The notes under the pieces are model-generated. The model was not told where the DNA came from, made no database searches, and was given only the letters and a program-made list of their open reading frames with translations. Both the position numbers and the translations under genes were made by a program. Source: Fimbriosthenelais zetlandica (taxonomy: Eukaryota). From it: 64,000 nt of DNA. The stretch lies in assembly GCA_977030845.1 (NCBI GenBank), contig OZ365112.1, positions 18,104,001-18,168,000 of the forward strand, in the 5' to 3' direction. The stretch's first letter is position 1. Each line of letters opens with the position of its first letter. This document shows, in pieces, positions 2,731 through 64,000 of the stretch.

Positions 2731-5700
2731 CTTGGACTTTTAATGAGAAGGGTACTCATTTTTGGTCTATTGGTTTTGCCCTCTGCAACTAGCAGGGACC
2801 TCATTTATAATTGTTATGATGTCAAACGCTTCCAAACCTTTTTTCGCTGGGAATACTTATGAATATTTTAATCTTACATATTTACCATAATCCAGCTCAT
2901 ATCACAAAGAGCATAAAAATAACTCTGAGACGGAGGCGAGTTGTCAGGAAGGTACACTGCGAATTAAGGAAAAAGTGAATAGAGGCAAGAGCCCTAAGCA
3001 TGCTCTATACTGGATACATCAAAGATGTCGCTGCCTGATTTGTGCCGTTAAAAAGCACAAAAAGCTAGAATTTACTTTAAAGTTCTGCCAGGATCACATA
3101 TGTATATGTACATCTATCATGCCAATCACAGAGACACAAGCTCAGATTGAGAGCGCGCTTTTTATAGTTTTCAGCAGGAATAAGATCTCTGTTTTTCTGT
3201 GCCTGTGAAGAACTTCTGAAGACTTTATTGATTTCATTTACTTTGTCTCAGTGTATCTCTTTGCTGATAGCTCTTGTCCATGGACAATATTTATATGAAT
3301 GCTGTTATCTTCTGTTTGCTTATAAATGTAGAGTTCCAAGCATATATCTGCGTGTCTTGTCCTCAGTGAATATAGAATACACTGTAAGGGATTTGCTTAC
3401 GTGGTGATTTGTGGAATGAATCCTTAGTGAAGATTCATTTATTTTTTCAACACTTGTTTGCCGCTTCAGCTATATAATGTATCTCTTTGCACCCCTTAAA
3501 CATACGTACTTTGATATCGTGGCTGCAAAGATGTATTTGTAGTCACATGATTAGACCCTAACTTATTTAACTTCGCAATGAATTGCTCACATCGCTGATA
3601 GTTATTGGTGCCATGTGTTGTAAGAGCCTTACTGTCACCCACCAGTCACCCTGGTTGTTTGGTGTTAACCGTCACCTAGTCCTGGGATGAGAGACTGTCA
3701 GCCATTTTGCACGAGATGTCTTGACCTGGACCTCGTGTCAATACGCTTGTCTTGGCCAGCCTAATTGCCTGATTTGGAAACTTGCTTTATTTTGTCATGG
3801 ACTGCAAACATAAGAGAGGGCTGCCGCGCTGCTCCACCTTGGCAATGAGTGACTCTAAGCTCTGCACCTCGCGAGCTGATGATGTGAACTTGCATCCTGT
3901 TTGGTGCCTTTCTGGCTCCTTCTACGCCAGATTGGACTGTGTTGTGGGTGGTTGGAGGTCCCACAAGGCTCCTTCTTTCTCCTTATCCCCCTCTTCCACC
4001 ACATCAAAGTGGCATTGGTGTACACTTTGTAGGAGAGGCAGTAGTTCCCATAGTGAGAACGGATCCAGGCTGAAGAGAGGAACCATGAAAGTCTCTTCTG
4101 CCGAACCTGATGTTGGTTTTCTAAAATTACTTAGCAACATTATGTCATAATGTACAAATCTATGTTATTTCCTTCTCTTAATTAACATTTAAGATTGTAT
4201 TTTGCACTTTCTTTGAGAAGAAATTTGCAGAAAAAGTCCCATGCGAGAATAAAGGAAAGTAAATGACTTCCTTTGTCATTTACAACAAGAAGAACTGACA
4301 TGACTTAAAAATTACATTACCAATTGCCGCAATTGTTGGCACGGCTACATTCAAGCCTTGCACAAATGTTTACAATTAGTGGTTAAATAAGAAGCTCTAT
4401 TTATGGCCAGTTTTCCATCACTCAAAGAAGCGGGAGACTTTGGCGGTGGATTGTATTTTATTGCAGACCTGTTGGTTGTCGTGTAGGTTGCCGTGGGAGG
4501 CACCGTTTGCAACAGCCGCTTTCTGTCAGCTTGTGCCTCATTATGACACATATTAACATGCGCTCTGGCGCACACTTCAAAGACATTCATAATCCTTCTA
4601 AAACACACAACGTCCTGCTGGAATATGTCCAAGATGGCCGCCAACATGGCTTTCTCAGTGGCGAGAACACCCGGTGGTAACCAGCAGAAGTGTGTATATA
4701 TCACGTGACTTGGGTCATGGATATTATGGGATAGTTTAGTTGATGTGGTATGAGTCTCTTTGTAGCCTTGGCAGAGCGAGAATTTTTTGTTGTGCCAGAC
4801 TTTGCTGAATTCTCACAGAGTCCGCCATTTCTTCACAGATTCTCACACAGTCCTGTAGCTCCCACCGTCTGTCAGACCCACACTTCCTGCAAATGATGAT
4901 GACTGGACTACAAGACCATTATCAAAAGCTGCTCTCCAGGATACAGTTCTTCTTGGAATGGTGTATACTATAAAATATGGGTTGTTTTCTTTCATTCTCC
5001 ATCACTTGGTCTACTGTTCTTTAAACCTTCGATCATCTTCCATAGCGAGCATGCTTTCACATGCCATCAGTGGACGATGATTAGCACCATTGTGTCTTAT
5101 TATGCTGTGGTACTTTTTAATTCCTTGATTGAATTATTAGATGCTTAAATCCGAAATTTGTTGATCCTCCCTTTCATGAGAAAGTAGCTATTTGCAAGGT
5201 TAGCGATTTCCCAGATAATGATCTTTAAGACTTTTTTCTGCCTCTCAGTGTTGATCTTTCAGTAGATGTCCGCCCTCACGTCAAGATAGCGACCTTTGAT
5301 AAGTTCATTTGGCTGACCTTTCATCTAATAAGATGAGCTCGCCTTGTAGAGGTATCGGGTCAACCTGCAGGTCAATGAAATGTTCATAAAACTCACGACT
5401 GACTTCTTTTTCACTGTAAAATGTGGAAAAAGGAGTATATCGAGAGCCCTGCTTGTGTTTTTGTCAAAGCCAAGTTGCTGAATTTTAAAGATAAAAGTGC
5501 GTGTTAAGCAGTACTTTGGAAGCACACTTTGAATTATGAAAAAATGGATAGGAACCCTCTATACTGTGCCTCTGAGGAAGCCTGACATTAAAGAGTTCTC
5601 GTTTGTCTATTGTGGGCAAAAGAAGGCGAAAAGCCAATATTGGATGAGAACAGAGCTGTTCATACAGCACTCCAAGAAATGTAGTCAGGAAAACCTTTTC

Positions 5701-8700
5701 TTAAAATGTGGCAAACAAGACCAAAAATGTAAGACATGCAGAAATATATATTTCCTGCTTTTTGGTGTGATTTTAATCTCCGAAAAGCATCATATATGTT
5801 CCCTATACAGCCCCATGCGCTGCAGGATGACACAAAGCAACATTTTACAACCCCTCTCTCAGCACTTGACTAAACGCTCAATGCTTGATCTCTTTGTGAG
5901 AATTCCTCGACTTTAAACCCAGAATCTGTACACTCGGATGGGGTACTATTATGGTAGAGGGCGCCACATAAGTAGACCCGATGGTTGGGCGTGGAAGAGC
6001 GCTGCCATCATCGAGAGCAACACTGGCGGCAAAATGCTTTGATGTGAGACGAGATGAAAAAGACGGGGAATTAGGCTGCAAAGGGGCTGGGAAAAGCGCA
6101 TTTAACGAGCGGTACGCATTGTGTGTGGGTGATGGTGGAAGGGAGGGAGTCAGAGGGAGGAGAAGTATGGCTACTATTTACTGGTGATGAGTGAAGGAAA
6201 GTTGAAACTGTTGGAAGAAAGATTCAGATGAGTCTGAACGCTTGAAGAGAACGAATTGTGCTAAGGTTCAGCAAAATCATAGTCCTAGATAATCAGCCAA
6301 GGAAACAAACTGGAGATTGACGATAAATATTGAGGAAATGGCACTTGATTGCCTTCCAATATCTTTCATCCATACTTTCCTTTGAAAATTTGTTTTTTTC
6401 CTTTTGATATAAAAGCGTTTTCAAGAGGAAAATACAGAGTGTTCCCGAAAGATGAATTGATCTTGAAGGAAAGCTCAGAGCACAAAGCACAGCAAGATAG
6501 ACCATATATATAAACTGATGTTCTTTTCGGTGGTTTAAAGCAAAAGCAATGTTATTGAAGCATTAATGAACAAGTGCTCTCATATGCTTTCTGGGCAAAA
6601 AGAAATAATGGGGGAAAGGATCAAAAAACATCTTGGGAATGTTTCCTGGTTACCTGCAATATTTTTGGAATGTCTGGAATTCTGGGACATAAGAAAACAG
6701 GGCTTTGAATCACAAAGAAACTTCCACATCTCTTTGCTGCTTTCCCTTAGGTGTTGGAATTCCCGGAAGTGGTGACCCAATTACCTTTTCACCAGCCAAT
6801 CATTAAGCAGCACCTCAGGCTCCACCTAGTGGTCACAGACATGTGATCAAACAGTCTCGTTCTGACGTCCAGCTATGTGGGTCACTGCTCAAAGTGTTCA
6901 GTGGGAGGATAGAGGCTTGGCTGGCCCTGCCAATCGTTCGTTCTTTTTATCTTTCTCTAGTTGGAATTTCCAAGTGTTGATCTGTGGGGTCGAACTAATA
7001 ACTCTCACTTGTATATTAGAGATGGAAGAGATGAGAAGCTCGATGTGGTTATGATGCTCCTGATTTGAATGTAAGAATCAGAATTCAGAGCTAATGTAAA
7101 ATAATCATCACACCGTTATTCCTTGTCTCCATCTTGTACATTAGTAGCTCTTTATGACATACCAAATTAGTTTTGGATTCCTTCTACGAATCATGATAAG
7201 AATAAATTCTTAGTTTTGAAAATGGTGGGTACATTTTTCCTTGATCCACGGTGGTACGGTTTTTTCAAAGAGATTTTTTTGCTTTGTTTCCCTTGTGATT
7301 GTGCCAGGTTTGTGAGGAATTAGGACAAATCTCACTACATCAAAAAGCAGGGCCTCATCTGCAGATGAAAAACTTTCCATAATGAAAGCAGGCCTATCAG
7401 TCTCCACGACTCCTTGTCCCAACCCATGTGATTGGTCAGTTGCTACACAGGCCATGATTGGTGGCAGTGTCAATCACATGATCCCTCTCAGGGTTCCCTT
7501 TGATCTTACCTTGGCAGCGAGATCTTAGTACGAGATCTCATGAGACTTGGTGTAATCTCCTCGGACTGTTCTTCTTATGAGACGGGAGGAGGTTTATTAA
7601 TGTATGGACCTCAAGTCGCCAGAGTTAATCACTTTGTTCTGGACATGTTGCTGGCTCAAATTCAGTATGATCTCTTAATGACTACTATCAACAAGTATGG
7701 GATAGCAACATGACCATTAATTGGCAAAAATCTTCTTAGAGAATGTAAATATCAAGTAGAGAATATTATTATTCTTTTGACAGTTGTAATGTTCGGGAAA
7801 CATTCCGGTTCTTGATATTGTTTTGCAGGAAGTTTACTAGATGACACAGGAAAACAGGTTGTTTCCGTCTTCCTTCTCCCATGAATGATGACTACCCTGC
7901 CCACCTCTTTATTTCTCAAGTCGCTACAAAGGGCAGCCAGGGGTCACGATCACAGAACCAATCTGAGGCTGAGATAAATCATCATAGTTATACGACATAG
8001 CCTCCCTCCAAAGCTGGCTGACTGGATTATTGTTCTATCACACACTTATCCTGTTTCGTGACAGGCCGAAAAATTTCAATTTAGATATGTGAATAATCAG
8101 AGTTCATGGGTTTGACGAATAGCAATGAGTAGAACTTGGTGATATGGCCTTGTAACTCTATTTAGAGTTCTCTGATGAATTGTCTAAAGGTCCTCCGTTC
8201 CTCTGGTGCCTATTACATTTTTGACATCTGTTTATATTGATGGTATATTTTCTGGCTCTCGTGTGTTTTTTGTCCAGTGATGGATCCATCGAGTCGTCCC
8301 CAGGTATAAATACGCCGTAATTCATTATTTCCTGTTCCCCTAGTTTCCCGTCTCTGTCTTTGATCTGCTTAAAATATTCTCTGAGATCAAAGCCCCAGGT
8401 CCGCAGTGTTAGTTAGACCCCATTTATACCTGGCGCTCTTTGACGTGAGAGAGGTTGAGGAGTAGGAGGCAAGCAGGTATAGGTGGCTACACCCAGTGGT
8501 CACCACCGACTGACCTCCTCTCATCCCACCTGCAGCTTCAGCCTCACTCATATTGCTTCAGAGTAGTAGTATAATTCTGATGAGAAAATGGAATGGTACC
8601 TGGCTGGTACCTATAGTAGTACCAGACTGGGTCACAATAACTTGATTAAGGTTAAGTCCTTGAAGGAGGAGGTTTTATCAACCAGGAAGACAGACATGAG

Positions 8701-11700
8701 TGATCAACTTCTCCTGAACCTCCTAGTAGTAGTAGAGTTTAGGGGAGTCGTTTGAAGCCCTCTGTTTGACCATACAATTTAGGGTCTTCGCTATGATTTG
8801 TACAGCGAGTGTTTTTGCACGCCTCTGTTAGGTTTCAATTTGAATCGATCCCAAATATTCAGCAATTTTAGATTTCTGGTCATCATCAGTTTTGTGCTGA
8901 GAGCTGTTTTACATCACATTTCACATAAATGCCCTGTCCACAAGTCACTGTGAGCAAATTGGGTCCAGGCTTGGGTCCCGCCGCTCCTTGACTTCTCTCC
9001 CCGAACACTTGATCAAACAAACAAAAAACACTAACTTCACAGAAGACACAAACTCTGTCCTGGATTCGCCACCAAAATGTCAAGGCTACTTGATTAAAAT
9101 GATAAAACGTGAGCACAGCGCTAACATCCGTGTTACTGATGAACTCGCCATGAAATGATCCTAATTCTTAGTGAGATGAAAGACTCCTGTGGTCGGCTTT
9201 TTCTCATTGTGGTCAAACCTTTCATGTTAGTAATAAGCTCACAGTTTCCCGCCATTTTGCACGATTGTCGTCTGCTGACATAGTCATGTGATCACACGCC
9301 TTGGGAATGAGGCTGAGGATCACTTTGGTTTGTGATCACTTCAAAAGGCCTGTTTTTATAAACCCTCCTTTTTTAACTGAATTATTACGGTTTTGTAGAA
9401 TTCGATTTTAAGGAGATTAATTTAGAACTTATGTTCCTGATGACAGGATGTGATGATTTAATTGATAGGAGAGCTGATAGGTGACAAATGTTTGTTGAGC
9501 TGTCCTGTAAGAGGGCCTGTTCCTGTCAGGGCCAGACTTAGCAACAGTAATTAATCCTTCAAAAGTTAATGCTGTCCGCAGACAAAACCTGTGTTGACCA
9601 GAACACTCAGGTTTTATCCTATTGTTCAATGACTCATCGAGATTCATTCTATTCCATTCAATAGTTTTCAGTAAAACCTCAGCTGCTCTTCAGTAAAGCT
9701 TGTTTATCCATTCCTTAATTAATAGAACTGTCCCAAGCATCAGTAAAAGGCACCATGCTATTGTATGGTGACGTCCAAGCCTAAAATACCATTACGGCTT
9801 TGAAGCTGCCTTCTTGTGAGAAAGGGTGGGTCCATGCATTCAGCATTCCGTGAGAATAAACGTGTCATGATCTCTGACTCCTCAGTGAATGAAGTATGCA
9901 GCCTTCTTTACCAATCACAGATATCTCATACATGATGCCATCTATATGATAATAAAGCTACCAAAAGACTGTGCCTGCTCTTTCACCTTGAAGGTCAGGG
10001 TATTCTTTTTTACCAGAGGATCTGATAAAAAAAATTCTGCATTCATTTCCTGTTATTTAGGACAGGGATGCACTGACTGGACCTGACTGCATCTCATTTG
10101 ATGATAGGAAGCTGATGGTAATATATATGTTGATCAGTTGTTTTCTCCAAAGTGTGTTCTGTGAGAAACATAATTATGTTGCTCGAACATAAAACTTGTG
10201 TGCTCTTTACCCCAAGATGTACTTTCTTCATCTACCATCTTGGCTCCGTCCAGCATACCACATTCATCCTGGTACAAACAGGTCCCTGGACTGCTGACCC
10301 TTATATTCCTAAACAATCCATTACATATATCTAGAGGGTCCTCTGGGAGATTGCAGAATGCTTCACTTCATTCACTTCCAATATATTCCCACCATCCAGG
10401 GTAGCGAACTCTGCCAACTTCACCAAGCTAATTAACCACAAGCTCATTTTTCCAACAAATGGTCCTCGGCTTTCCTGAGCAGGCAATATTTCTTGTTAAA
10501 CCAGGCGTTCCATGATGCTCGCCAAAACTATTGCTTACAGGTTATTGGTCGTTGAGTTGCTCATTTAGTTATGACCCTGGTTGGCTGAGGGATGCTTCAC
10601 TACCCAATGAGCTGATTGAGAACAAAAGCTGCCTGGCCAAAAGGACATATTGGTGGCGTTGGCAACCGAGAAGCGAGTCTCATTTTCCTTGACCCGACCC
10701 CGGTGGTCAAACAATCAATCAATGCTCAGACAAAAGCCATCTCCTGCCAGCATTTTGACAAATGGCTACCGGCACTAATATGGCCTTCTTATGATGCTAT
10801 TATATTATTATGAAGAAGGCTAAAAATCTCTGCAAGTGTATGAAGTACATGTAGTCAAGTTGAAAAATCAAAAGCTCGCATGTATTAATGAGAACACTGG
10901 CCAGATGAGAGAACAAACTTTTCAGTAATGCCTCCACAAAAGTGTTATATACTATGATAAGCTTGACAACCTTGGTTATAATTAGTTACTAAATGGAAAG
11001 TTTTGCAAAGATTTCACGAGAGATGGCATTAGTCCACGTGCTGGTCCCCAAAGCCATCCCCATCCCGGTACCTAGACAGGAAGCCTAGCCTGGTCCCCTC
11101 TCCTCCACTTAGATGTTCATGGAACGTCACCGCATCTAACATCAATCAGAAAAATCTTTTTTTTTTCATTAAAAACTGAAAGGTTCGTTCGCTATTCTCT
11201 TTGATGTCTCGTCAAAAAGACAATGGTTGCCGTAGCAACTCATTAAAGCCGAGAGTAATTGTCCCACAGGCCGGCAGGCGGATCTGCCATCACTAATACT
11301 AGATAGAGGATGAGTTAGGGGGCAGGGCACCTCACGCTGAGCAAACCAGAGGCTAGAAAAAATGACTTATTACTCTAATTACCAGGTAGATTATTGTAAA
11401 TCAAAAGGCATAACTTGCCTACATTCTTGTGGATTATATAGCATGAGATTGGCATTCAAGAAAATGCATATTTATAGACATTCGTGTCACATATGCGGGA
11501 ATTTATAATACCAATCTGTGAAACGCTTTCATTCATATGATTCATTATTCCTATCAATGGACTTTCATCAGTAAAGTCGTGTTGAAAGTGTTCGTCAAAT
11601 GTAATAAATTATACATGGAGTGTATTCCTTAGCTGTTCAGATCATTTCTAAGTTCACCATTTTGCTGCACTTATCCCCCCTGCCCCCTCCCCATCCCTTT

Positions 11701-12744
11701 GCCTGTCCCCCTACAGCCCACATTAAATTGTGCTCTCTTCCTTTCACCCCGCCATGTTAATGTTTTAAAAGTCTTTCTCAATCCGCACAAATCCCTTTCG
11801 GCTCGGTGGCAAGCTTTGCGGAGGGCCTTCTTTTCTTCTCAAATGCACTCACATCAAAGCCCTCTCCTGCGAGTTTTCATATTTTGTGAAGAAAGGCTGC
11901 CGTCACGCGCAAATTATAAGATAGTCTGTGACAAATGAAAGAGTGCTTCAGATGAAAGCAGGATGGGATGAAAGTCGTCTGCTAGATTAGAGTCAGTGAG
12001 ACTGGGCGGGAAAGGCGGGTGGGAGGGAAGGAGAGAGGCGGTAGGCATTGGGACACGATTTGAGTGGCTACAGGAAAGCTTTGCTTTGCACAGCAAAGTC
12101 AAGATGTACCAAAGTTATCTATTAATACCACATAATCTCATTTAGCATTCCCTTTATTCCCGCGTCTTTGTGTGAATTCACGCACTCTGTCATTAGTCAT
12201 TAGCTGCAACCATGCATGTTAACTTATGATGCTATTCTTCCTCTCTCAATGTCTCCATATTTCTCTTTTATTGTCTCTTTTTCTTTCTCTCTGATTTCTC
12301 TTTCACTTTAGTACTGACTTTCGTAATCTTCCTCCCCAATCACCCCCAGCCCCCTCTTTCTGCTCTCTTTCATTCTCTTCCCCGTCTCTATCTGGCCCCT
12401 CTTTCTTGCTTTTCTCCCTCCCTCTATGCCCATGTGAAAGCCTTTGACGGGTGTACCCTGCAAAGAAGGGCTTTGAAGAACTTTTAGGTATTTTATCAAT
12501 GTCCTCGCTCTTTTCTTTTTGTTGGGATGGATTCTTACTGATCAAAGTGTCTTTTATCCTCTTTTGATATCTAGTGCATACAACATGAGACATGATGCAT
12601 ATTTTAACAGAATATGGAGTCGATGCCTCTGACTTTCATTTATCATCGTTACAGTGATTTAAGCTTATTTCATACATTTGTTATTAATTGAGATTTCTTT
12701 CAGTACTCAGACTAGCTTAGAAAATTGTACTTTGAGACTATTAT

Positions 12745-13085
12745 AGGAAATGGCACTCTGTGAGTAGTATAGGAAATAGTACGCTGTGAGTAGTATAGGA
12801 AATAGTACTCTGTGAGTAGTATAGGAAATAGTACGCTGTGAGTAGTATAGGAAATAGTACTCTGTGCGTAGTATAGGAAATAGTACTCTGTGAGCAGTAT
12901 AGGAAATAGTACGCTGTGAGTAGTATAGGAAATAGTACGCTGCGAGTATTAGTATATAAAACTGCACTCTGTTAGTAGTATAGGAAATGGCACTCGGAGA
13001 GTAGTTATGTGAGTACCTGTAGTATGGCAAATATTAGTAATTCATGAGTATAATTATAGCAAATAGTACTCTGTGAGTAGTATGG
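12745..13085. repeat. 26-bp minisatellite (AGGAAATAGTACTCTGTGAGTAGTAT)n
   Basis: Seven to eight near-identical head-to-tail copies from 12745 to ~12955, then degenerate copies to ~13085. No spacers between copies. Confidence 0.95.
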
Positions 13086-25000: not shown

Positions 25001-25146
25001 TGTCAACTCTCCAATGAAATTTTCTCGTCTATTGCACAGCTTTGTGCCTTCTTTTGAATTCTCATAAATCAGGCGCGTTTCATCCTGATATTTTGTTTTA
25101 TGCAGCAGCGGAAATATAAATGGCAATGCATTTAGAGCTTTTATTG

Positions 25147-25268
25147 TGACGTCATCAAAGGCAGCTTTAGGGGAGTTAGGGGAGCATTAGTTTTATTGTA
25201 TTTGCTCTAGTCGACAGCGCAGGGAGCGCTCCGTGTTCTACAGATGACAGCCACCTTTGATGGGCGGC
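25147..25268. promoter_or_regulatory. Candidate Wnt-response element: CRE overlapping a TCF site, plus a TCF+helper pair
   Basis: TGACGTCA (25147-25154) overlaps ATCAAAG (25154-25160). CTTTGAT at 25255 is directly followed by GGGCGGC. Confidence 0.45.
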
Positions 25269-27760: not shown

Positions 27761-28091
27761 CTTTGATCAGGACGGAGATACAGTGGAACCCGTATGGATC
27801 AATCCTCCCTGGGTCCTGCAGCCTAACACTTTGATCCGTCCTGGTATCCTCCCACCCCACTCTGCTGGTCCTGGGGCTGTTGGGATTAAACTTTATCATC
27901 CCCCTCCTGCTCCTCCTCCTCTACCCCCTCCCTCCTTTTCCACCCTTACTCCCACCCTCCTATTCAATGCCTTTCTTTGAAGCCTTTGATCACTGAACAG
28001 AGACCAGCACACAGTTTGGGTGGGCCCAGGAAGCTGAGCCTACACCGAGCGACCTGCACTGGCTGGTCCTCTGGCCCGGTCTGACTTTGAT
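27761..28091. promoter_or_regulatory. TCF/LEF site cluster (candidate enhancer)
   Basis: Four same-orientation CTTTGAT at 27761, 27829, 27984 and 28085, plus a CTTTGAA variant near 27975. Confidence 0.55.
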
Positions 28092-51219: not shown

Positions 51220-51346
51220 TCAATCGACCTTCTCGAGCCTAGCAAAGACCTTGCCCTCCCAGAGAGGGAGGATGGCTTCTTCATTACTAACTTCCTCAAA
51301 AATAACTCCTGATCCAAACTCGTCACTGGCCGCCTTGAAGAAATAC
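51220..51346 (-). CDS. Axin: Axin last coding exon (C-terminal half of DIX domain)
   Basis: Acceptor ttcttgcag|G, phase 2. Encodes (R)YFFKAASDEFGSGVIFEEVSNEEAILPLWEGKVFARLEKVD*, matching the Axin DIX C-terminus (human AXIN1 YYFKKVSDEFDCGVVFEEV...KVEKVD). TGA at 51220-51222. Confidence 0.97.
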
Positions 51347-54038: not shown

Positions 54039-54218
54039 CTGAAGCTGCCACGTTTGGTGATGAGTTGCTTGAACTGTCCCAGCGTAACTTGTTTTCCTGG
54101 AATGGTGGTTCTGTAAGGGATGTCATCCCCATGGAACAGGTAACCCACCACCGTCACGTCGCCTTGTGACGGTGTGGTGGGAGCTGTCGCAGACGGGCGT
54201 CGAGTTGTACGAATACGA
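54039..54218 (-). CDS. Axin: Axin exon, N-terminal half of DIX domain
   Basis: Acceptor cttgttttcag|T, donor AG|gttagt, 180 nt, phase 2-2. Encodes [59 protein letters not shown](R). The IPYRT...VTLGQFK...KRG motif is diagnostic of DIX. Not in the ORF track. Confidence 0.96.
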
Positions 54219-54331
54219 CTGAAAACAAGCAGAATTACAATTATTATATGTTCACTTCCTGATAGTTTCCGAAATAGTTTTATTGTTAAAAATGCCAGTA
54301 CATGTGCTTGGATATTTCTATCTGGTCTTAC

Positions 54332-54469
54332 CTGTATGTGTCTGCATCAGCTGAAAGGTCGAGGACTTGGGGTGGCAAACCCTTTGAGGATGAGGAGAGA
54401 GAACGAGGAATTGGAGGGTAGTTGGGTGGAGGCATGCTCCTTTTGTCCTTACCAGACATACCCATGCGG
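54332..54469 (-). CDS. Axin: Axin symmetric 138-nt exon (possible cassette)
   Basis: Strong acceptor ttgttcctttatctctttacag|C and donor CAG|gtaaga, phase 2-2, open. Encodes [45 protein letters not shown]. Flanking introns are 118 and 113 nt. Not in the ORF track. Confidence 0.85.
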
Positions 54470-54587
54470 CTGTAAAGAGATAAAGGAACAATTATAACAT
54501 GAACTTCTACAAAATCAAGAGCGAAGATGTAAAGTTGGAAAGGATGTTAGACTTGAATTAGAGTTGGAAACTTTGAGATAAACTTAC

Positions 54588-54827
54588 TTGGATTTGAGCA
54601 TCTTTGTTTTATAATCATCCTCCAGCCGCCTCTTGACCTCCTCTAGTTGCGTCATAGGGTTGGGAGGGTCGAGGAGAGGCATTGAAGGGTCTTGTACCAT
54701 GGGTTGTGTGGGGAGTACCGACCGGTCACCAAAGTCGGATGAAACCGACGTGGACAGTTGTGAATGCAGACTGCGGTCAAGTGAAGCTGACCGGCTAACA
54801 TTATATTGTACTGGCTTCTTACTGGCG
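54588..54827 (-). CDS. Axin: Axin exon with the conserved QDPSMP...PNPMTQLEEVKRRL motif
   Basis: Acceptor ttctattctttcag|C, donor AA|gtaagt, 240 nt, phase 2-2. Matches human AXIN1 [24 protein letters not shown]. Confidence 0.96.
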
Positions 54828-55622
54828 CTGAAAGAATAGAAAAGATTTAAATAAATATGGGAACATAAAGATCCACTGCAAGCGGGCAAAGATATAACTT
54901 GAATCTAAATAAAACTAAGTGTACTTTGACATTGCAAAATTTAGGGACCAATTTTATAGGGAGTTCCAACAAGTAGTTTTCCACCATTCTACCCGCATTT
55001 GGATAGCGATGGTGTACATACTCATCAACTTTAGCGATTCTAGTCTGTGTGATGGGGAGGGACATTCTGCCCCATGTGAGGATGTGTTTTTGAGGGCCTC
55101 TGTTGGGAGCGTCTCATGTCTCCATCTCACACAGTGGATGAGGAGACAGGAGAGATGGAGAATTAATGTATCCCTCCAGCCAGCTCCACAGCTCTCAGCT
55201 TTCATCTTAACGTGATAAAAAAGTCTCTGCTTTCCTCTATACAATACAGCAACTAGAAAGCCACGCAGATAGGCCTGAGAGGCTGTGTGTTCTTGGACTT
55301 GAAAGGCCAGTGGTAAAGAGCCGTGTGGCTTAAAGACTTGTGTCAAGTGTAGCCTGAGCTCAAAGCTGACTGGCCGAGTGACGACATCATACAAAATGTT
55401 CCATCAGGGAGATCCCCACAAAGCCGGGCCCCAAACCAGGCCCGACTGGTGGCAGAAAGGCACCAGAGACTGTGCTGGGCCTTTCATGGAGAAGGCAAGG
55501 CGGAGGGAAAGGATACACATGAAAGAGTGGTGAATCATAATTAAAAAGTGGCCAGTAAATCATGTCATGGTCGCAGGGCAGTATTAGTGGTCAGTCTGCA
55601 AACCCGGCTGCCTCACAAGTAC

Positions 55623-55751
55623 ATCAAAGCGTGCCGTGATCTCACATCAAAGTAGACACGGGCAAAGAGACCGTGTATCACAGGCCGGCCTGGCTACTGA
55701 GTCCCTCACTCACACAGACTTATTAGCTACAATAAAAGATCTCAATCAAAG
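55623..55751. promoter_or_regulatory. Intronic TCF/LEF cluster
   Basis: ATCAAAG at 55623, 55646 and 55745; the first two have the optimal ACATCAAAG context. Confidence 0.5.
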
Positions 55752-56479
55752 GCTGACTCGAAAGGAATAACACAAAAACTCCTCCCTCAAAGTCCCTCTT
55801 GGAGCGGACTATTTAGTGTCGATTCCTTACAGGGTGTTGCACAGCATACTAGAAGCTAACTTGGCTTCTCAAAGGGTAATTAAAATTGGCTGTGCTGTTG
55901 GGGGTTGATGGGTAGGAGGGTTGGGTGGTGACGAACAGTAATCATCCCGACTGGTTGAGCTAATTCTTTAAAAACTGGCTTTGAGAATGAATGAGGAAAC
56001 TATCGTTCTTCCTACCCCATACATCTGAGTGAAAATCCCCTTTTCGTCAAGTTTCAACCACCGATCTAAATGTAGGCCCCATTTATTTGCACATCACATC
56101 GGAAGCAAGGCAACTGAACATGAAGGGTGAGTAATTGCCGTCAAATACCCTTGCCAGCCACAAGGCGCCAATCCATGCACTACTCGCCCTCAGCGTACAC
56201 GGGGCATGGCCACTGACAACACCTCCTGTTGGAAGGAGTGGCTTTTGTGTTGATAGGGGTCAGGGCTTGATCAGACTGAGCTCTCTGATGACTAATTGGA
56301 GAACTCAATGGATAAAGGGCTTGATTAGGAACTTGTTGCTAGTAAAGCCTATCTTAGATGGATGTATGTGCTAACAAGATGAGTAGCAAGATGGACTAAT
56401 CTTCCGAGTGCAATGAGTGGGAATCATGGGGAAATTTAGCAGACTATTTCAGTGAGTGATGGTCGGATGGAGAGCTTAC

Positions 56480-56629
56480 CTTTGCCGGTGAGGAGCCGGT
56501 GTACCTGAGGAAGACTTGTGGGAGGACGAGTGTATAGAGCGCTTGTGAGAGGAGCTCTTCTCGGAGCCGTCCGTAGAATACTGAGTGTTGGTGTGCACCT
56601 TCTCATTCTCCATCATCCACGCTAATACC
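56480..56629 (-). CDS. Axin: Axin exon (VLAWMMENEK...HRQ)
   Basis: Acceptor gtgtatttgcag|G, donor AG|gtaagc, 150 nt, phase 2-2. The spliced NEKVLAWMMENEK corresponds to human AXIN1 NQKIMQWIIEGEK. Confidence 0.93.
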
Positions 56630-56955
56630 CTGCAAATACACAAACAGATTCCCATTAACAAAAATTAAAGTGATAACAGCTTAATATTAAACATTTTAAT
56701 ACAAGATGATGCCAGGATAAAGATTTCTCAGAGAATGCTGAGAGTCCAAATTCCAAAGTTATTTTTCTGACCTTGATGGTGCTATGGTCCTGTGATCATA
56801 GGATCACAAGGGGAGGACAATCCCCCACCTCCTTTCCCTCCCTTCCCCCACACTCCCACCAGTGGCCGGATAGCCTGTTTACTGCACAAACACAAGGCCC
56901 CTTTGTGGGCAGAAATGTGGCTTTTTTCTCGTGCTAACTACAAAGCAGCGCTCCT

Positions 56956-57571
56956 ATCAAAGTCCTACATCTGAACACGGCCAGCTTTGATGTCCACAGC
57001 GGGCCATGCAGCGCAGAGAGACGGGTCAGCTACTGTTTTCTCTGTACCAAACCTCATCATAGAGAAAAGAGGGGGTGGGGGTCTCTATAGCCCCCCTCCT
57101 CCTAGCCTCAGCCTTTGAGGTCTCATTACGGGGCTCTGATCTCACGGAGGAGATGCAGAGATCTGGGTGAGGCAGTAAAAGGCGCTTTGCAGGGCAAGGG
57201 AACGTGTTGTCATGCACACACGACCCACAGGTACTGTCAAGGGGAGGGCGAGCGGGAAGGGGACGTCTACAGAAAGAGATGTAGACAGTGTTGATAAGTG
57301 AAATGTTAAACTATTAAGCTGCATAATGCTTTTCCAAGTATAACATCATTTCAATATCAACTTTGAGAATAATGCCATACATATAACGCATACACAGGTG
57401 TGATCTGTATAATATGTAATAGGTTCGATCCAGCAGGGCACAAGGCGGGCAATGAATGGACTGGAGGAAAGTTGTAAGCATATGGAGCTGGGATTTAATG
57501 CATGACAAACAATAACTTACATCACTGACACACAGCTCAGGGGGACATCAAAGCTAAGCATTCTCTTTGAT
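56956..57571. promoter_or_regulatory. Two inverted TCF site pairs in an Axin intron
   Basis: ATCAAAG-N22-CTTTGAT (56956-56991) and ATCAAAG-N11-CTTTGAT (57547-57571). Confidence 0.45.
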
Positions 57572-58857
57572 GGCCTTGTGAAGCTGGGCTCTATGTATGT
57601 GTCTCTAGGCAGCCACGCCCAGCGTTAACGTGTGTTGTTAACAGGGCACGTATGGCACTTGAATCTTCCTTCACTCGCCTATATGATACGAAGGTCAGGA
57701 GACAGAGGCTCAATCTGACTTTGTATCTGGTAAAAGCTCATAACGTAGCTTTCATGAGGGCTCTCTCTACAACATAAAGGCGAGCTCCGAATCGAATTAT
57801 TATATCTTCTTCATTTCATCTAATGGAATAAAGTTGCTCAGAGGCTAACGTTTCAAGAGGCAAGAGGTCTTTGCTATTTAGACCTGCCATCAGTCAACAG
57901 GTCACATCGTGGCTTTGTTGAGAGGGGAGTGGAAAGAATGAAACTGAAACAATGGGGAAGGAATAAAGGAAGGATAGGCTGAACGAAGGGAAGTGAGACG
58001 GATCTAGTGGCGGTGGGGTGCTGGGAGAGGTTGATGAGGGTGTTTGGAGGGGAACCAAAAGCTTTCATCCACCCTCTGCTAATTGCTATGGGGGATGATT
58101 TCAATGATAAAAAGGCCTTTAATAAGTGATCACAACGCGCTTAAATAGTGCAACATCAAAGGCACAGCTGGATCCCGCCTGGCCAGATCAGGCCTAGGTG
58201 TGTGTACAGTGCGGGGGTTAATTTTTGTTCACTAGTCACAGCCGTTTATTCAGACTCCTTTTGCCATGACCTAGCCCTCATTGAACTCCCTTTTCTTCTA
58301 TACAAGATCACAAGATGGCCATCCCGCACAAGATCGGGGCATGCCAGGTCCGTCAAAGAAGAGGAATCCTGAGTCATCAAAAGAAGGTGACCTCCGTCCT
58401 CTAAACACACAAACCCCGACCTTGGCTCCACACATAACAGACGCCAGGTGATCAAGAGGGACGTCAACTCCTACAAGCTTTGCTGCCCAAGTTATGCGTG
58501 AAGCATTTTAAACATGGCCAAATACTGAGGGCTCCTTGCAGCTATGGGTATAAATCACTTGGGGAGTGAATACGTATAAAGTATATTCAGTGCATTCCCA
58601 TGGCCGCCGATGTATATACCCAGAAACAACTTTCATAGAGAGTTGACATGGCAGCCTTTCATCTAACCACTTCTATCACATTCTCGTGTATATTTTATTC
58701 CAGTTAAGTTCCTTCAGGTAAAGATATCAAAGTACAGGCAGGTAGTCACGACAGTCAGACAGACTAAAGCACCCACGCTCTCTACACACCAGACCTCAAC
58801 TATACTAAGATTGCCGGTAAAGCTAAGGTAAAGCATGACAAGTCCATTGCATTCAAA

Positions 58858-58871
58858 GGGGGGGGGGGGGG
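58858..58871 (+). repeat. Poly-G run (14 G)
   Basis: Direct reading. Confidence 0.9.
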
Positions 58872-59049
58872 AATTCTAACAGAAGTTTCTTAATTTTTTC
58901 ACAAAATATAGTCTAAAAGATGAAAAGCCTTTCAATAAAAACTTTCAAGAAGACTTGAGAATTCATCCATTGTTTTAAATTTCATCCTTTGACAAAGACC
59001 ATCCCAAAGGTAGGCCTGATCAAAGATTACTGGCTTTAAGTCAACTTTT

Positions 59050-59900
59050 TAAGCTTCACTTTCAACCACCGGCCCACTTGAGTCCATTGTGGCTCCTGTT
59101 TTCGCCCACTTCAAACATGAGGATTCTTTCAGCGAGCCGGGACTGGCACGGTTGATCTGTCATTTCCGGGTGTTGCCAGTTCGCCTCGCTCCCCTCCGCT
59201 CTTTTCGCGCCTTCTCATAAGCACAACTCTCCGCCTTTCATCTCTGCAAAAACCCGATCCCTCCTGCTCCGCTTTTTAATACCCGATCGTCCTCGCCACT
59301 CCGTTTACCAATTACACTTGCGCCCATCAACAAATGCTGGTGAATACATCAAATTTTAACCGGTTCTCTCTCCTCCTTTCATCAAGAGCTGGCGGCTGCT
59401 CTGCGCGCTTTGATGACAAAACGCGACCAGGATCCGGAGCCAGCCCTTCATAGAGGGATCCACATCCAGGCGCCACCACAAATATCAATTACAAAACCAC
59501 CTCCTCCCCCAGCCCGACAATAGAGAGCTATTCACAACCCATCCTTCAGAGCTGCTCGGGGAGGGGGAGGGGGAAGGCTATTGGTGGCCTAAAGGATAGT
59601 AGAGCTGCTCCATGCTTTGAGCTGCCACCACAAATTGTCAAATTACCCCCCGTCCCAGCAGCGTCCTCCAATCGGGACGGACGCGGGCTTTTATTACCCC
59701 CCACCCTGCCACTAATCCCGCCTGTTTACCAGCCTCTAATCCACGGATTACCGCCCCCGCCCCCCTAACACTGCCCCCATGGTGGGGAGAGATCCAAGCT
59801 TCCTTTATCTGCCACCAGCTGGCGCGGGATGTGAGGGCAGGGCGTGGCGCTAATAGTTGGTCCCAGCAAGAAGATCAAACAGCCACCAAGTCATGTACCA
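59050..59900. promoter_or_regulatory. CpG/GC-rich intronic element with a TCF site, GC boxes and an inverted TAATCC pair
   Basis: Many CpGs. GCGCTTTGATG near 59408, CCGCCCCCGCCCC near 59751 and TAATCCACGGATTA at 59737-59750. Confidence 0.45.
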
Positions 59901-60433
59901 ACAGCCCCTATGGTAGATGAGAGGGTGGTCGCCCATCCCTCCTGTTATCATGCTTCTACTGCTACAGTGGTCGGCTGGGGGAGGGGGTACTACCCCACCA
60001 TCCTTTATACATACACATCCAAATCCTCTATATACAGAAACAGCCCCTCCCTACAGTCCTTCCTCCCATGCCTAAATTAAAGGCACTATTCACCTGTCTT
60101 TGTGACTTGTGATTAACAGTGTCCCTCAGAGAGGAACACCCTCCCTTGTGAAGCCAGTTTTCCTTTTATACACATGGCTTCCCTCCACCCAGTGCACTGT
60201 GAAGCCTGGGCTACATTACTGGGATAAGGACGTTCATACCAAGCACTCTTATCACTAACGTCCCATTGTTTTTCCCTGTAAATGGTGCACAATCAGCTGG
60301 TCAACTCTACCCCAACCCCAACCTCCTTTCCTGTAGTTCCTCTGTAATTTTACCCCATGCTGAATGAACATAGATAAGAAGAACAGACAGAGAGTAGTTG
60401 ATAATTAGTTGAAGTACTAAGTGCAATACTTAC

Positions 60434-61152
60434 TTTTCATTGGCTGGGTATCCCGTGGGCTCATATCGTACACTAACTCCACTGTCGATGTTACTACTCG
60501 TATCCAAACTCTTCTTAGTGTTTGATGAGCGTTTAGTGTCCTTTGATCGCCCTCTTGACCCGGGTTCTTCCCAACTTCTTGAGAATTCAGAGAAAGATCG
60601 TTCAGCCCGGTGATGTCCTGAACTCCGGTTGTGAGGATCAATCTCCATATGCTGGCTTTTATTTAAACTAAGTTTAGAGTCCTTGCTGTTGTGGTGATGA
60701 TGGTGGTGATGATGGACATGTTTGCTAAGGCGATCGCCATCACCATAGCGATTATATACACCTGACTTTTCCTCACCCATCCCACTATCAAAGGATAATA
60801 GAGAAGTGAGGTGAGATGCACTGTCCTTGTCTTTAGTTCTTTTAATATGGTTAGGTTTATGTGGTAAAGATATGCCTGACACATTTGGAGAAGGACCAGC
60901 AATCATTCTCCTTCCGGATAAGCTCCGGTCACGATCCGACGTTCGCTCTGGAGAATGTCTACCTGGAGTCCGGCTGGGTGTCTGTCCAGCGGAACTGTCC
61001 CATATCCTAGAACAATGCTCCTCCAATATGCTTTGGGCATTGTCCTCCCGCTCCTTCTCTGCCATGGCGGCTGACATGAGGGCCATCATAGACACTGACT
61101 TATTATGAGCAGATAACGTTGATTTGTTCATGTCCTCTTCGTCTGTCATCTG
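60434..61152 (-). CDS. Axin: Axin exon encoding the beta-catenin-binding region and His tract
   Basis: Acceptor tctcttttatcttta-CAG-CAG (phase 0), donor AA|gtaagt, 719 nt open. AQSILEEHCSRIWDSSAGQTPSRTPGRHSP matches the Axin beta-catenin-binding helix and S/TP cluster (human [21 protein letters not shown]). HVHHHHHHHH is also Axin-typical. Confidence 0.96.
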
Positions 61153-62592
61153 CTGTAAAGATAAAAGAGAGGAGGATATTAATAAACAGCAGCTTAACGG
61201 TTAACTGAGATATATTATGGTTACATATAAAGACAGCAAATATCGCCAACAGTAATCTTGCTCTATAAAAGATTTTCAATTCATACAGGCTCTTGCTATG
61301 TTACATCCCCTACTTGGTAAAATATGAATATTAGACCACTCGACATCATGTCTTATCAATATGACATACTGTCACTTCCTTATCGTTATCACAATGTGTG
61401 TGGTAATCTTCATCCCCGTCTCAGTGCATATACATCTTGACTGCAGGTCAATTTGATCGTGTTGAACATTTACAGCTGATAAGAAAGTTAAACATCACCT
61501 GACCCGTGATATATCTCAGCTTGGGCTTTAGAGTTTCAGAGAGAACTTCATACAAAAGTACATTGATTTCTTATCAGACTACTTCAAAGAATCAAAGAAT
61601 CAATGTGTAGACAGTGTGGGTAAACGAACTATGGTGCAACAAGTGCCCCATGTGATGCACTACTCACAAGCCCCTCCCACTGATTCGACTACTGGCAGGA
61701 CTACCATTTACGGAGGAGGCTCAATCTCACAAGCTCTTAACAGTCCTTCTGACTAACCAAACAATGACTTGTCAAACCAACCTGATCGGCTTCATTAACC
61801 ATGCACATGATTTGAGTAATGACAGTCACAGTTCATTGAGATTTTTGGTTACCGGTGTCACTGAGCAATGATTAATAAGTCTGACACATAAAAAAAACAG
61901 GCAAAAACATGAACTAAAGCTCAGAAGTACGGGTAGAATACCCAACAACAAAGACAGGTAGGGCAGTTCAGGACGACCTGGGCGTGGATTGACTTTGATC
62001 TCGGCAGTTGAGGAGAGGAAGATGAAAGATTGGGAGAGGATGAAAGAGAATGGGGAGACATCGAGATGAGTATTATAGAAAACGTCGGTGAGATGAGCTT
62101 ATATCAAAGATAAACCCTACAAACAAGACTTCAGTTGGTGGAAAGGGGTTGTGATCACTGGACCAGAACTGGGGGAACAAGCAACAGAGGACCTGCTGGG
62201 GGCTGACCCCGATACACGACAATAGAGGTACAACAGGCGCAACTATTTCTGCCCCTTTTGTCCCTTTCTCCCTCAAGCAACCACACTTCATAATGCAACT
62301 CATAGCGCACACAACCAGGGTTTATATCGACACTTGTGTTACAACCAAGAGTTCATTCATTTTCCCTTATCAATAGAACGAAACAAATGCTGAGCTGGGC
62401 ACAAATCTTAACAGAAGCCAAAAACACACTTAGAGTAAAGTTAGCTACCGCTGAGTGCTGTGAGAGGGCCGGATGTTTGTCACCCCGGTGTGTTTAAGCC
62501 TTTGATAATATTTGGCCTTTCTTGTCTGAGGAGAAAAACTTAACAGAAGCCAATAACATTTCACCAAATACCAAGCAAAACAGCTGACTCAC

Positions 62593-63000
62593 CATGGGTT
62601 CCTCCTCGTTCTCATGGATCACACCAAGTGTGGCTGAGATATGTTTGTTTAATAGAGACTCGGTGTTGAGGTTGTTCATGCACTTGTTGTTATTAAAGTT
62701 ATGATTGTTGGTCATGGTTCTGTTCTGGTTACCACACCATTTGACACCCATGCTTTCAAGTCCAGCTTTCAGTGCGCGGCGGATTTCATCTTCAACATTC
62801 TCAGATATGACATTACCAACAGTGAGCGGCATGACACCGTTACCATTAGACAGCATGGTCCAGACTTTATCCTGGGGGCAAGTGTTCCCCTGCTCAGCCA
62901 TGTAGTACTCCGTACCTTGTCGATGGATGACTTTGATTAATGATATGCTACTTCCCAGCACCAGAGAATCCCCGTCCTGAGTGAGGTTAAGCATCTTCAT
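62593..63000 (-). CDS. Candidate additional or alternative Axin exon (MKMLNLTQ...LGVIHENEEEPM)
   Basis: Frame open from 63084 to the donor ATG|GTGAGT at 62593/62592, which is phase 0 and in frame with the 61152 acceptor. First ATG at 63000. Possible acceptors at 62977 (phase 0) and 63062 (phase 2). No homology recognised. Confidence 0.55.
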
Positions 63001-64000
63001 CCTCGCTGAGTGGTTGTAGGCTATGGCATGCCCAGACACACATGTGACATACAAGTAATAACTGTAGAATAACACTAAACTGTTCTAGCAGCGTCTCTTG
63101 CTTATTCCACAGTCTTAACTGGATGTAGCCCTGGTCAGACTGTTCTCTGTGGGCTGCTGTTGTTGTCTGGTCTCTCAGTGGGACAGCTGTGGCTGCATGG
63201 ACTGGGTGGAGACAGACTGACAGGTGCCTCTCTGCCTGCCTCAATGGGGAACAATGGACTTCACAGCAAAGGACTCACAGAGTCCAAATTCCTCTTACAA
63301 GTAAGCTTCCTACGGGTCTATATGATGTAGGATTCCAGTGTAAGTGACAGGATTCCACTGTCAAATCCGTATCAATGTATGACTAACGAGTGATAACAGC
63401 TGAGATACCGAGTGCCTGATGCTGAGGCCTCTCACTCTCCACTACTACCTGCTCAACTCCCAGTCAGAGCACTAATGTCTCTACTCCCCTTACTCACACC
63501 CTCTCAGCCAACCCAACCCCGCTGCTCATTGGCTGCTTGCACAGCTGAGCCTGTGCTGCCGCCGGTGACAGAAGACTGAACTAAAACATTGATGACCTGG
63601 GAAAAGGCTTCGGAAACAAGTGTGCTATGCTTATTAGGGGTTGATTAGATACGTAACCGACAGGTAATCTAGGAGGAAAAACTAATTTTCTTTGTAATAA
63701 GTGAAGAGGGAGGAGAATGGGAACACGACCTGTTACTTTGAGTCACATATTTGAGGCAGCATCTGGTATTGTGTGCACGTTTATGGTGGCAACATCAGAG
63801 GACCGTGTTTAGCATTTTACGAGGAGAAAGGCTTGGTAATGCATTCCCTCCATACACAGATCAATAGCATTTCTTACAAGGAGAGACATATGTGCATACA
63901 TAGAGAAGCATCAAAGAGGACTGCTGTCTTTTGATGATAAAATCAACGTTAAGTACATAAAATAGGGGGGTCTAAGCAGCACCCCCGCCCCTTCATTACC

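What the first reader, a model, noticed from the sequence alone, without database searches (positions are those of the whole stretch)
3018..63916. Whole window dense in TCF/LEF motifs: a Wnt-feedback regulatory landscape extending ~46 kb past the Axin 3' end
Seen: a manual scan finds about 80 exact CTTTGAT/ATCAAAG sites (~57 in 3-49 kb, ~24 in the Axin body), versus about 12 expected for 64 kb at ~40% GC. About 26 have the full optimal A(C/G)ATCAAAG context, versus 1-2 expected. No coding exon is recognisable in 3-49 kb. Known: vertebrate Axin2 is a direct TCF target forming a negative-feedback loop through promoter and intronic sites. Inference: this Axin sits in a large, selected Wnt-responsive domain reaching far 3' of the gene. 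The sites could alternatively serve another Wnt target beyond the left edge.
Basis: partly seen in the sequence, partly recalled or inferred. Interest (0 to 1): 0.75.

Follow-up and report, generated by a model that had tools for sequence, protein, structure and literature searches.

The report
TCF-site field around a spiralian Axin
The non-exonic DNA in and around the 3' half of this worm-like animal's Axin gene carries about five times more perfect binding sites for TCF (the transcription factor at the end of the Wnt pathway) than chance allows, and four other spiralian Axin loci show the same excess, so it is very probably the DNA side of the known Wnt-to-Axin negative feedback, built here as an unusually broad, evenly spread field.

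Summary
The count is real: 85 exact CTTTGAT/ATCAAAG sites against 17 expected, and 27 optimal A[C/G]ATCAAAG against 2.5. It is the most enriched of all 8,192 7-mers, and no site is repeat-borne. The same word is the most consistently enriched 7-mer in the Axin territories of Lineus, Tubulanus and Lingula, and Patella is also enriched. The optimal 9-mer is 10-14x enriched in all five spiralians. Neighbour genes there sit at background, as do the Axin loci of Ptychodera and amphioxus. The Wnt-feedback reading is therefore supported.

Three corrections apply. First, 3-49 kb is not free of coding sequence: a conserved terminal exon at 32683-32855 (+) shows that the left ~33 kb lies inside a convergent CEP112-like gene. 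Second, the sites are spread like a Poisson process rather than in enhancer modules, with density falling from Axin introns (9x) to the spacer (5x) to the neighbour body (4x), and exons are poor in sites. Third, a second word, GAGATGAAAG, is equally enriched and unexplained.

This genome's own background could not be measured. The scan had already noted the same pattern on an overlapping Axin window and on the Tcf locus 220-370 kb away.

The parts
3018..63916 (.). Field of 85 exact ATCAAAG/CTTTGAT sites (38 and 47 by strand), 27 of them in the optimal A[C/G]ATCAAAG context, about 1.4 per kb, Poisson-spread
51223..64000 (-). 3' half of the Axin gene (residues about 452-967). Coding exons at 61155-60409 (beta-catenin-binding motif), 56631-56482, 54829-54590, 54471-54334, 54223-54020 (DIX start) and 51372-51223 (DIX end, stop). 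The 5' half lies beyond the right edge. 24 sites against 2.6 expected (9.1x), almost all intronic
   Evidence: Pfam; tblastn of P0067; blastn of the relative's mRNA; density
48900..51222 (-). Axin 3'UTR. It aligns to the relative's 3'UTR down to 49589; the end near 48.9 kb is extrapolated from that mRNA's length. It holds no TCF site
32856..48899 (.). Spacer between the two convergent 3' ends: 5.1x ATCAAAG measured over 32856-51222 (which also takes in the site-free Axin 3'UTR and last coding exon), higher CpG o/e over 33001-49000 (0.61 against 0.46 and 0.51), positive AT skew
40776..41529 (.). Only local cluster above the raised uniform density: 7 sites in 750 bp, about 7.5-8 kb beyond the Axin 3' end; three AGATGAAAG lie nearby (41250, 41631, 42044)
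   Evidence: scan statistic P 0.042
32683..32855 (+). Terminal coding exon of a convergent CEP112-like (DUF4485 family) neighbour gene
   Evidence: tblastx to the Lingula neighbour; ORF, acceptor and stop; Lingula gene's Pfam; CEP112 = DUF4485 + coiled coils, PMC11443074
2901..32682 (+). Inferred intron-rich body of that neighbour gene (exons not mapped): T-rich on +, low CpG o/e, 37 ATCAAAG against 8.6 expected (4.3x)
   Evidence: inference from skew, CpG and the terminal exon
5318..62030 (.). Second enriched word family, (G)AGATGAAAG(G): 19 copies of the 9-mer in this span against 1.1 expected, on both strands, evenly spread

Best explanation
The window holds part of a locus-wide field of high-affinity TCF (Pangolin/LEF-type HMG box) binding sites that belongs to the Axin regulatory domain and wires Axin transcription to nuclear beta-catenin. 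That is the Wnt negative-feedback loop known from vertebrate Axin2. Without Wnt, TCF with Groucho would sit on the sites and hold Axin down. With Wnt, beta-catenin turns the same sites into activators, more Axin is made, and the destruction complex damps the signal. Here the sites are not packed into a few enhancers. They are scattered at random positions through all non-exonic DNA of the domain: Axin introns, the 16-kb spacer downstream, and the introns of a convergent CEP112-like bystander gene. That pattern is what selection on the number of sites, rather than on their positions, would produce. Shown here: the excess, its optimal flank, unique flanks, the Poisson spread, the density gradient, the exon poverty, and recurrence at the Axin loci of four other spiralians but not in their neighbour genes. 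Inferred: TCF occupancy, Wnt responsiveness, feedback, and the assignment of the left 30 kb to Axin.
For: 85 against 17 and 27 against 2.5. Rank 1 of 8,192 7-mers. No shared flanks. Neighbour-word spectrum fits TCF: ATCAAAG 5x, TTCAAAG 2x, Sox-type AACAAAG/AACAATG 1.2-1.5x. Density gradient: Axin introns 9.1x, spacer 5.1x, neighbour body 4.3x. Exons plus 3'UTR 0.43 per kb against 1.47 per kb elsewhere (P 0.03), and the relative's 5.5-kb mRNA has 1 site (P 0.003). Cross-species: Axin gene bodies 121 against 31 (3.9x), flanking intergenic 32 against 10.7 (3.0x), neighbour genes 5 against 6.4 (0.78x) in Lineus, Tubulanus and Lingula. ATCAAAG has the highest minimum z of all 7-mers over four Axin territories. 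A[C/G]ATCAAAG is 9.6-14.3x enriched in five lophotrochozoans, against 1.5x and 1.2x in Ptychodera and Branchiostoma. Literature: Axin2 is a direct TCF target with a validated WRE about 45 kb downstream of its TSS (PMC8421206); Platynereis Axin is a putative, partly responsive Wnt target (PMC5996498); ccdc46/CEP112 flanks axin2 in fish, and a ccdc46-derived element drives an axin2-like pattern (PMC3206014).
Against: The spread is indistinguishable from uniform (variance/mean 0.80; gaps under 150 bp 16 against 15.8 expected), unlike classical Wnt-responsive elements. There is no Helper-site enrichment next to the sites. The excess enters a neighbour gene's body, whereas in the three other species with neighbour-gene DNA the neighbour genes are at background. 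An unrelated-looking word, GAGATGAAAG, is equally enriched, which could point to a genome-specific word bias. The Tcf locus 220-370 kb away is reported as saturated too (unchecked), so a regional cause is possible. No expression, accessibility or binding data exist.
Confidence: 0.6

Rival explanations
1. Genome-wide or chromosome-regional word bias of this species: ATCAAAG (and AGATGAAAG) are over-represented in non-exonic DNA well beyond Axin, for a reason unrelated to Axin regulation, such as a genome-wide architectural HMG-protein site or an unknown sequence-generating process. First readers noticed it only where a Wnt gene primed them.
For: Poisson-uniform spread over 61 kb. The excess continues through the neighbour gene's body. 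AGATGAAAG is 17x enriched here but weak or absent in other species' Axin loci. Other windows of this genome are noted for window-wide word excesses, and the Tcf region nearby is also 'saturated' (unchecked).
Against: Three other lophotrochozoan genomes (Lineus, Tubulanus, Lingula) show the same word enriched only in the Axin territory, with neighbour genes at 0.78x. Density here is graded towards Axin, 9x to 4x. Exons and the 3'UTR are at about background. The tandem-repeat block at 1-2900 has none. No mutational process is known that makes this 7-mer while leaving its one-base neighbours at 1-2x. The palindromes flagged elsewhere in this genome are not notable here.
Confidence: 0.2
2. The sites left of about 33 kb are real TCF sites but do not serve Axin. 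They regulate the CEP112-like gene itself or another Wnt target beyond the left edge, and Axin's own domain ends in the spacer.
For: The left 30 kb lies inside another transcription unit. The density step from 9x to 4-5x falls outside the Axin body.
Against: No drop in density at the gene boundary near 33 kb (4.3x against 5.1x). The homologous neighbour in Lingula is at background over the 4.4 kb seen. CEP112 is a centrosomal/sperm protein with no known Wnt control (PMC11443074). Axin-CEP112 linkage in Lingula and vertebrates fits a bystander arrangement.
Confidence: 0.12
3. The word is read by a factor other than TCF, either another HMG-box protein (Sox, Capicua) or the unknown reader of GAGATGAAAG, so the field is not a Wnt device.
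For: No Helper sites. A second equally strong word differs only in the core base. There are no binding data.
Against: The full A[C/G]ATCAAAG optimum is the published TCF/LEF optimum. Sox words are at 1.2-1.5x. The enrichment tracks Axin, the textbook TCF target, across phyla.
Confidence: 0.05

Closest known systems
Vertebrate Axin2/conductin negative-feedback loop (promoter/intron-1 TCF sites, plus the CREAX enhancer about 45 kb downstream of the TSS)
   Same: An Axin gene studded with consensus TCF sites, including sites downstream of the gene (PMC8421206). The 7-site cluster here lies about 8 kb past the 3' end, and Tubulanus and Lingula also have small clusters 4-5 kb past theirs.
   Different: Vertebrate elements are discrete modules of about 4-8 sites in 0.4-1 kb and depend on partner sites (CDX, CAG). 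Here there are 85 sites at random positions over at least 61 kb, and no function has been tested. This is the single Axin of a spiralian, not a Wnt-inducible paralogue.
Drosophila-type bipartite Wnt-responsive elements (HMG site plus C-clamp Helper site, as in nkd and Notum)
   Same: Invertebrate single TCF; feedback-inhibitor genes carrying many TCF sites.
   Different: Helper motifs (GCSGS, GCCGCC) are not enriched within 12 or 25 bp of the sites. GCCGCC-type words are only mildly enriched locus-wide.
Genomic regulatory blocks with bystander genes (ancient microsynteny kept by enhancers inside a neighbour)
   Same: A CEP112-like gene lies next to Axin here, in Lingula and in fish (ccdc46-axin2, PMC3206014), and its introns here carry the same site excess.
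   Different: The link was not seen within 10 kb in the two nemerteans, Patella, Ptychodera or amphioxus. There is no evidence that the intronic sites act on Axin.
Tcf locus of the same genome (earlier scan findings s1-193437, s1-188387) and the overlapping Axin window (s1-189710)
   Same: The same word is reported as saturating introns of another Wnt-pathway gene 220-370 kb away, and the 5' half of Axin.

Membership tests
TCF-driven Wnt feedback target (Axin2-type) | Consensus TCF/LEF sites (A[C/G]ATCAAAG optimum) in excess of chance | tested here: met
   85 against 17 and 27 against 2.5; rank 1 of all 7-mers
TCF-driven Wnt feedback target (Axin2-type) | Sites lie in non-coding DNA of an Axin gene | tested here: met
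   24 sites in the Axin body, 22 of them intronic, 9.1x
TCF-driven Wnt feedback target (Axin2-type) | The excess is specific to the locus and not to the genome | tested here: inconclusive
   Met in Lineus, Tubulanus and Lingula (neighbour genes 0.78x). Not testable for this genome. Within the window, only exons, the 3'UTR and the tandem-repeat block are poor in sites
TCF-driven Wnt feedback target (Axin2-type) | Recurrence at orthologous loci | tested here: met
   Optimal 9-mer 9.6-14.3x enriched in five lophotrochozoan Axin territories; absent in two deuterostomes
TCF-driven Wnt feedback target (Axin2-type) | TCF/beta-catenin occupancy and Wnt-dependent transcription | not testable with these tools
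The only literature is a partial Axin response in Platynereis (PMC5996498)
Classical Wnt-responsive enhancer module | Several TCF sites clustered within a few hundred bp | tested here: not met
   Spread equals uniform; the best cluster, 7 sites in 750 bp, is only marginal (P 0.042)
Bipartite HMG plus Helper (C-clamp) element | GC-rich Helper motif within about 10-25 bp of the HMG site | tested here: not met
   GCSGS 7 against 6.6 expected and GCCGCC 3 against 1.1 expected within 12 bp
Genomic regulatory block with bystander gene | Target-bystander linkage conserved across phyla | tested here: inconclusive
   Present here and in Lingula, in the same convergent orientation, and in fish by literature. 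Not seen within 10 kb in five other loci
Genomic regulatory block with bystander gene | Elements inside the bystander act on the target gene | not testable with these tools
   Needs contact maps or deletions

The most novel reading that the evidence does not exclude
The domain is a position-free 'counting field' written in two codes. ACATCAAAG and GAGATGAAAG would be read by the two TCF isoforms that differ in the alternative first HMG-box exon (described in Platynereis and noted for this genome). Selection would act on the number of each site across a domain of 100 kb or more that includes a bystander gene, so that the locus gathers a TCF/beta-catenin hub whose size sets the gain of Wnt feedback. 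This would be a spiralian-specific enhancer architecture without discrete enhancers.
Probability: 0.12. Interest if true: 0.8.

Novelty: new variant of a known kind. Interest (0 to 1): 0.55.

Why it matters
Axin feedback is the main damper of Wnt signalling, but its cis-regulatory basis outside vertebrates and flies is undescribed. If the reading holds, spiralian animals wire that feedback through a very dense, evenly scattered field of optimal TCF sites covering the whole locus, not through a handful of enhancers. It would be a natural test case for whether selection can act on site number rather than site position, and for how far a target gene's regulatory domain reaches into a neighbouring gene. 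It also offers a simple sequence signature (the optimal 9-mer at 10x or more) for finding direct Wnt targets in unannotated spiralian genomes. Finally, it flags a second word whose reader is unknown.

Tried and rejected
- **Repeat-borne sites:** rejected. No two sites share even 65% of their 40-nt flanks in the window or in four other loci.
- **Helper/C-clamp signature:** not found.
- **Coupling of ATCAAAG to ATGAAAG, and strand runs:** none.
- **Owenia fusiformis as the source genome** (its locus came back 'withheld'): rejected, since its Axin is only 41-58% identical to the window's exons.
- **Reaching this genome's own record:** failed. The window's Axin ORF is not on record.
- **Congener conservation:** not possible. 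The closest relative exists only as a 0.9-kb contig and a 5.5-kb mRNA, at 78% (exons) and 69% (3'UTR) nucleotide identity.
- **The look-up of sequencing runs:** first busy, then closed, so read laying was never used and there is no RNA evidence.
- **P0013 and P0117 look-ups:** found nothing.
- **Atlas search of the 56-aa terminal exon:** gave only generic coiled-coil look-alikes.
- **Permissive tblastx:** found no further exons of the neighbour.
- **Pfam on 29 further ORFs across the window (27 of them in 3-49 kb):** nothing significant.
- **Rfam:** nothing.
- **Syntenic EF-hand and pseudouridine-synthase neighbours** seen in Lineus, Tubulanus and Lingula: not found in the window.
- **Literature search** for Axin-CEP112 synteny by those words: empty.
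Full report
**1. The observation**

An exact search finds 85 CTTTGAT/ATCAAAG sites between 3018 and 63916. Dinucleotide-preserving shuffles give 17.0 +/- 3.9, and none of 100 reaches 85. The optimal context A[C/G]ATCAAAG occurs 27 times against 2.5 expected.

In an unbiased table of all canonical 7-mers, ATCAAAG ranks first. It is still 3.4-fold over a third-order Markov expectation. Every site has its own flanks: no pair shares even 65% of 40 flanking bases, so this is not a dispersed repeat.

Upstream positions lean to A at -2 and C/G at -1, the published TCF/LEF optimum. Sox-type words (AACAAAG, AACAATG) are at 1.2-1.5x, and TTCAAAG, the second-best TCF core, is at 2x.

**2. Gene content of the window**

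Axin is on the minus strand. The Pfam beta-catenin-binding motif lies in the exon at 61155-60409. A 967-aa Axin from a related species (P0067) maps with residues 452-967 onto six exons ending at the stop at 51223. That species' mRNA aligns on through a 3'UTR to at least 49589. The 5' half of the gene is beyond the right edge.

The statement that 3-49 kb holds no coding exon is wrong. A tblastx comparison with the genes next to Axin in other species hits 32685-32783 on the + strand (E 5e-8, 20 of 33 residues identical). The match is to the last exon of a 988-aa DUF4485 gene that lies convergent to Axin in Lingula. In the window this ORF starts at a ttttcag acceptor and ends at a stop at 32853-32855.

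DUF4485 plus coiled coils is the make-up of CEP112/CCDC46 (PMC11443074). ccdc46 also flanks axin2 in fish (PMC3206014).

Composition agrees with a + strand gene body. At about 33 kb the AT skew flips from T-rich to A-rich on the + strand. CpG o/e is 0.46 over 3-33 kb, 0.61 over 33-49 kb and 0.51 over Axin. So the left ~30 kb is the intron-rich body of a convergent neighbour, and only about 16 kb is true spacer. I could not map the neighbour's other exons.

**3. Shape of the field**

The sites are spread like a Poisson process. The variance/mean ratio per kb is 0.80, and there are 16 gaps under 150 bp against 15.8 expected. The one cluster, seven sites at 40776-41529, is only marginal against the already raised density (P 0.042).

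| Region | ATCAAAG observed / expected | Ratio |
|---|---|---|
| Axin body (introns) | 24 / 2.6 | 9.1x |
| Between the two 3' ends | 24 / 4.7 | 5.1x |
| Neighbour gene body | 37 / 8.6 | 4.3x |
| Tandem-repeat block 1-2900 | 0 / 0.9 | none |

Exons plus the 3'UTR carry 0.43 sites per kb against 1.47 per kb elsewhere (P 0.03). The relative's 5.5-kb mature mRNA has a single site (P 0.003 at the locus density).

No C-clamp Helper motifs accompany the sites. There is no strand-run structure.

**4. Locus-specific or generic?**

I therefore fetched Axin loci from other animals and ran the same blind 7-mer analysis.

In Lineus, Tubulanus and Lingula together:

| Compartment | ATCAAAG observed / expected | Ratio |
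|---|---|---|
| Axin gene bodies | 121 / 31.0 | 3.9x |
| Flanking intergenic DNA | 32 / 10.7 | 3.0x |
| Neighbouring genes | 5 / 6.4 | 0.78x |

Of all 8,192 words, ATCAAAG has by far the highest minimum z over the four Axin territories. The next words are just its overlapping shifts.

The optimal 9-mer by species:

| Species | Enrichment of A[C/G]ATCAAAG |
|---|---|
| This window | 12.6x |
| Lineus | 9.6x |
| Tubulanus | 14.3x |
| Lingula | 12.5x |
| Patella | 10.3x |
| Ptychodera | 1.5x |
| Branchiostoma | 1.2x |

None of these sites is repeat-borne. So the analysis does not yield enrichment automatically. In the spiralian genomes where a control exists, the excess is confined to Axin and its flanks. 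By parsimony the same holds here, but that step is an inference, not a measurement.

**5. A second word**

At word lengths 8, 9 and 10, the top-ranked word of the window is not the TCF optimum. It is GATGAAAG (35 against 3.6), AGATGAAAG (20 against 1.1) and GAGATGAAAG (11 against 0.25). ACATCAAAG follows at 18 against 1.07 (tandem repeats masked).

The word lies on both strands, is evenly spread, and is not coupled in space to ATCAAAG. It equals the reporter-type site AGATCAAAGG with the core C changed to G.

The flank depends on the core. ACATCAAAG (18) and AGATCAAAG (10) both occur often, but AGATGAAAG (20) far outnumbers ACATGAAAG (2).

In other Axin territories the word is weak: Lineus 8 against 1.5, and the rest at most 2 copies.

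Three leads bear on it:
- ATGAAAG and CTTTCAT were reported as functional TCF-4 elements in the human PLD2 promoter (PMC2920823).
- An HMG box reads the minor groove, where C:G and G:C look much alike. This point rests on my own knowledge.
- Platynereis Tcf has two alternative exons for the start of the HMG box, and the authors propose different DNA-binding properties for the isoforms (PMC5996498). The same exon pair is noted for this genome (s1-217045, unchecked).

Whether the word is a variant TCF site, the site of another factor, or a genome-wide word of this species remains open.

**6. Mechanism and rivals**

The best reading (0.6) is a selected, locus-wide field of TCF sites that couples Axin transcription to beta-catenin. 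This is the known negative feedback, built here as scattered sites rather than modules, and reaching through the spacer into a bystander gene. A Poisson layout is what selection on number rather than position would give.

The rivals are:
- A genome-wide or regional word bias (0.2). It is favoured by the uniformity, by the second word, and by the reported saturation of the Tcf locus 220-370 kb away (unchecked).
- Left-hand sites that serve the neighbour gene or a gene beyond the edge (0.12).
- A reader other than TCF (0.05).

**7. Known or new**

Axin2 as a direct TCF target, with a downstream enhancer, is textbook (PMC8421206). In spiralians, Axin is only a putative, partly responsive target, and I found no cis-regulatory description (PMC5996498; searches).

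The scan had already noted the same pattern on the overlapping window to the right (s1-189710) and on Tcf (s1-193437, s1-188387), so it is not unique to this report.

- the cross-phylum control;
- the restriction to spiralians among the seven loci examined;
- the Poisson architecture and the density gradient;
- the correction about the neighbour gene and the Axin-CEP112 linkage;
- the second word.

I file it as a new variant of a known kind, with moderate interest.

Noticed in passing
window 5318-62030 (20 copies of the 9-mer after masking tandem repeats, 19 of them in this span; two more stand in the masked array at 139 and 522): GAGATGAAAG(G) is the top-ranked 8-, 9- and 10-mer of the window (10-mer 11 against 0.25 expected). 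It lies on both strands and is evenly spread. It is the TOPflash-type TCF site with the core C changed to G, and it is much weaker in other species' Axin loci.
   Followed up: partly
window 32683-32855 (+); L004 about 33747-33845: Terminal exon of a CEP112-like (DUF4485) gene convergent to Axin, as in Lingula. With ccdc46-axin2 in fish, this suggests an ancient Axin-CEP112 microsynteny.
   Followed up: partly
window 33001-49000: The spacer between the two 3' ends has the strongest A-over-T skew on the + strand (+0.058) and the highest CpG o/e (0.61). That could mean an unmethylated intergenic block, or an unannotated minus-strand transcript or Axin read-through.
   Followed up: no
window 62494-63075 (-): The 193-aa ORF that another note proposes as a hidden Axin exon (s1-207641) has no counterpart in the related species' full-length 967-aa Axin or its 5.5-kb mRNA.
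   Followed up: partly
window 1-516, 1313-2486, 12718-13005, 32499-32578: Tandem arrays: 21/42-bp units (1-516), a 353-bp unit x3.4, a 26-bp unit x11, and a 28-bp unit x2.9 just upstream of the neighbour's terminal exon. The first block holds no ATCAAAG but several ATGAAAG.
   Followed up: no
window-wide: GC-box/KLF-Sp-like words (GGGAGGG 26 against 6, GGGTGGG 23 against 5.8, TCCCGCC 15 against 2.5) and the CRE palindrome TGACGTCA (5 against 0.56) are also enriched. Sp5-type partners of TCF are a possible lead.
   Followed up: no
L002, L003, L004: An EF-hand gene, Axin and a PseudoU_synth_2 (RPUSD-like) gene are neighbours in Tubulanus and Lingula, and Axin and the PseudoU_synth_2 gene also in Lineus. 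Neither neighbour is detectable in this window.
   Followed up: partly
L003 45508-47041; L004 31742-31897: Small TCF-site clusters 4-5 kb beyond the Axin 3' end in Tubulanus (5 sites in 1.5 kb) and Lingula (3 in 155 bp). They recall the window's cluster at 40.8-41.5 kb and the human enhancer downstream of AXIN2.
   Followed up: no
same piece, 220-370 kb beyond the window's end (from earlier notes): The single Tcf gene lies within about 0.3 Mb of Axin on the same piece and is reported as saturated with the same sites. Linkage of two Wnt-pathway genes with the same signature was not examined here.
   Followed up: no
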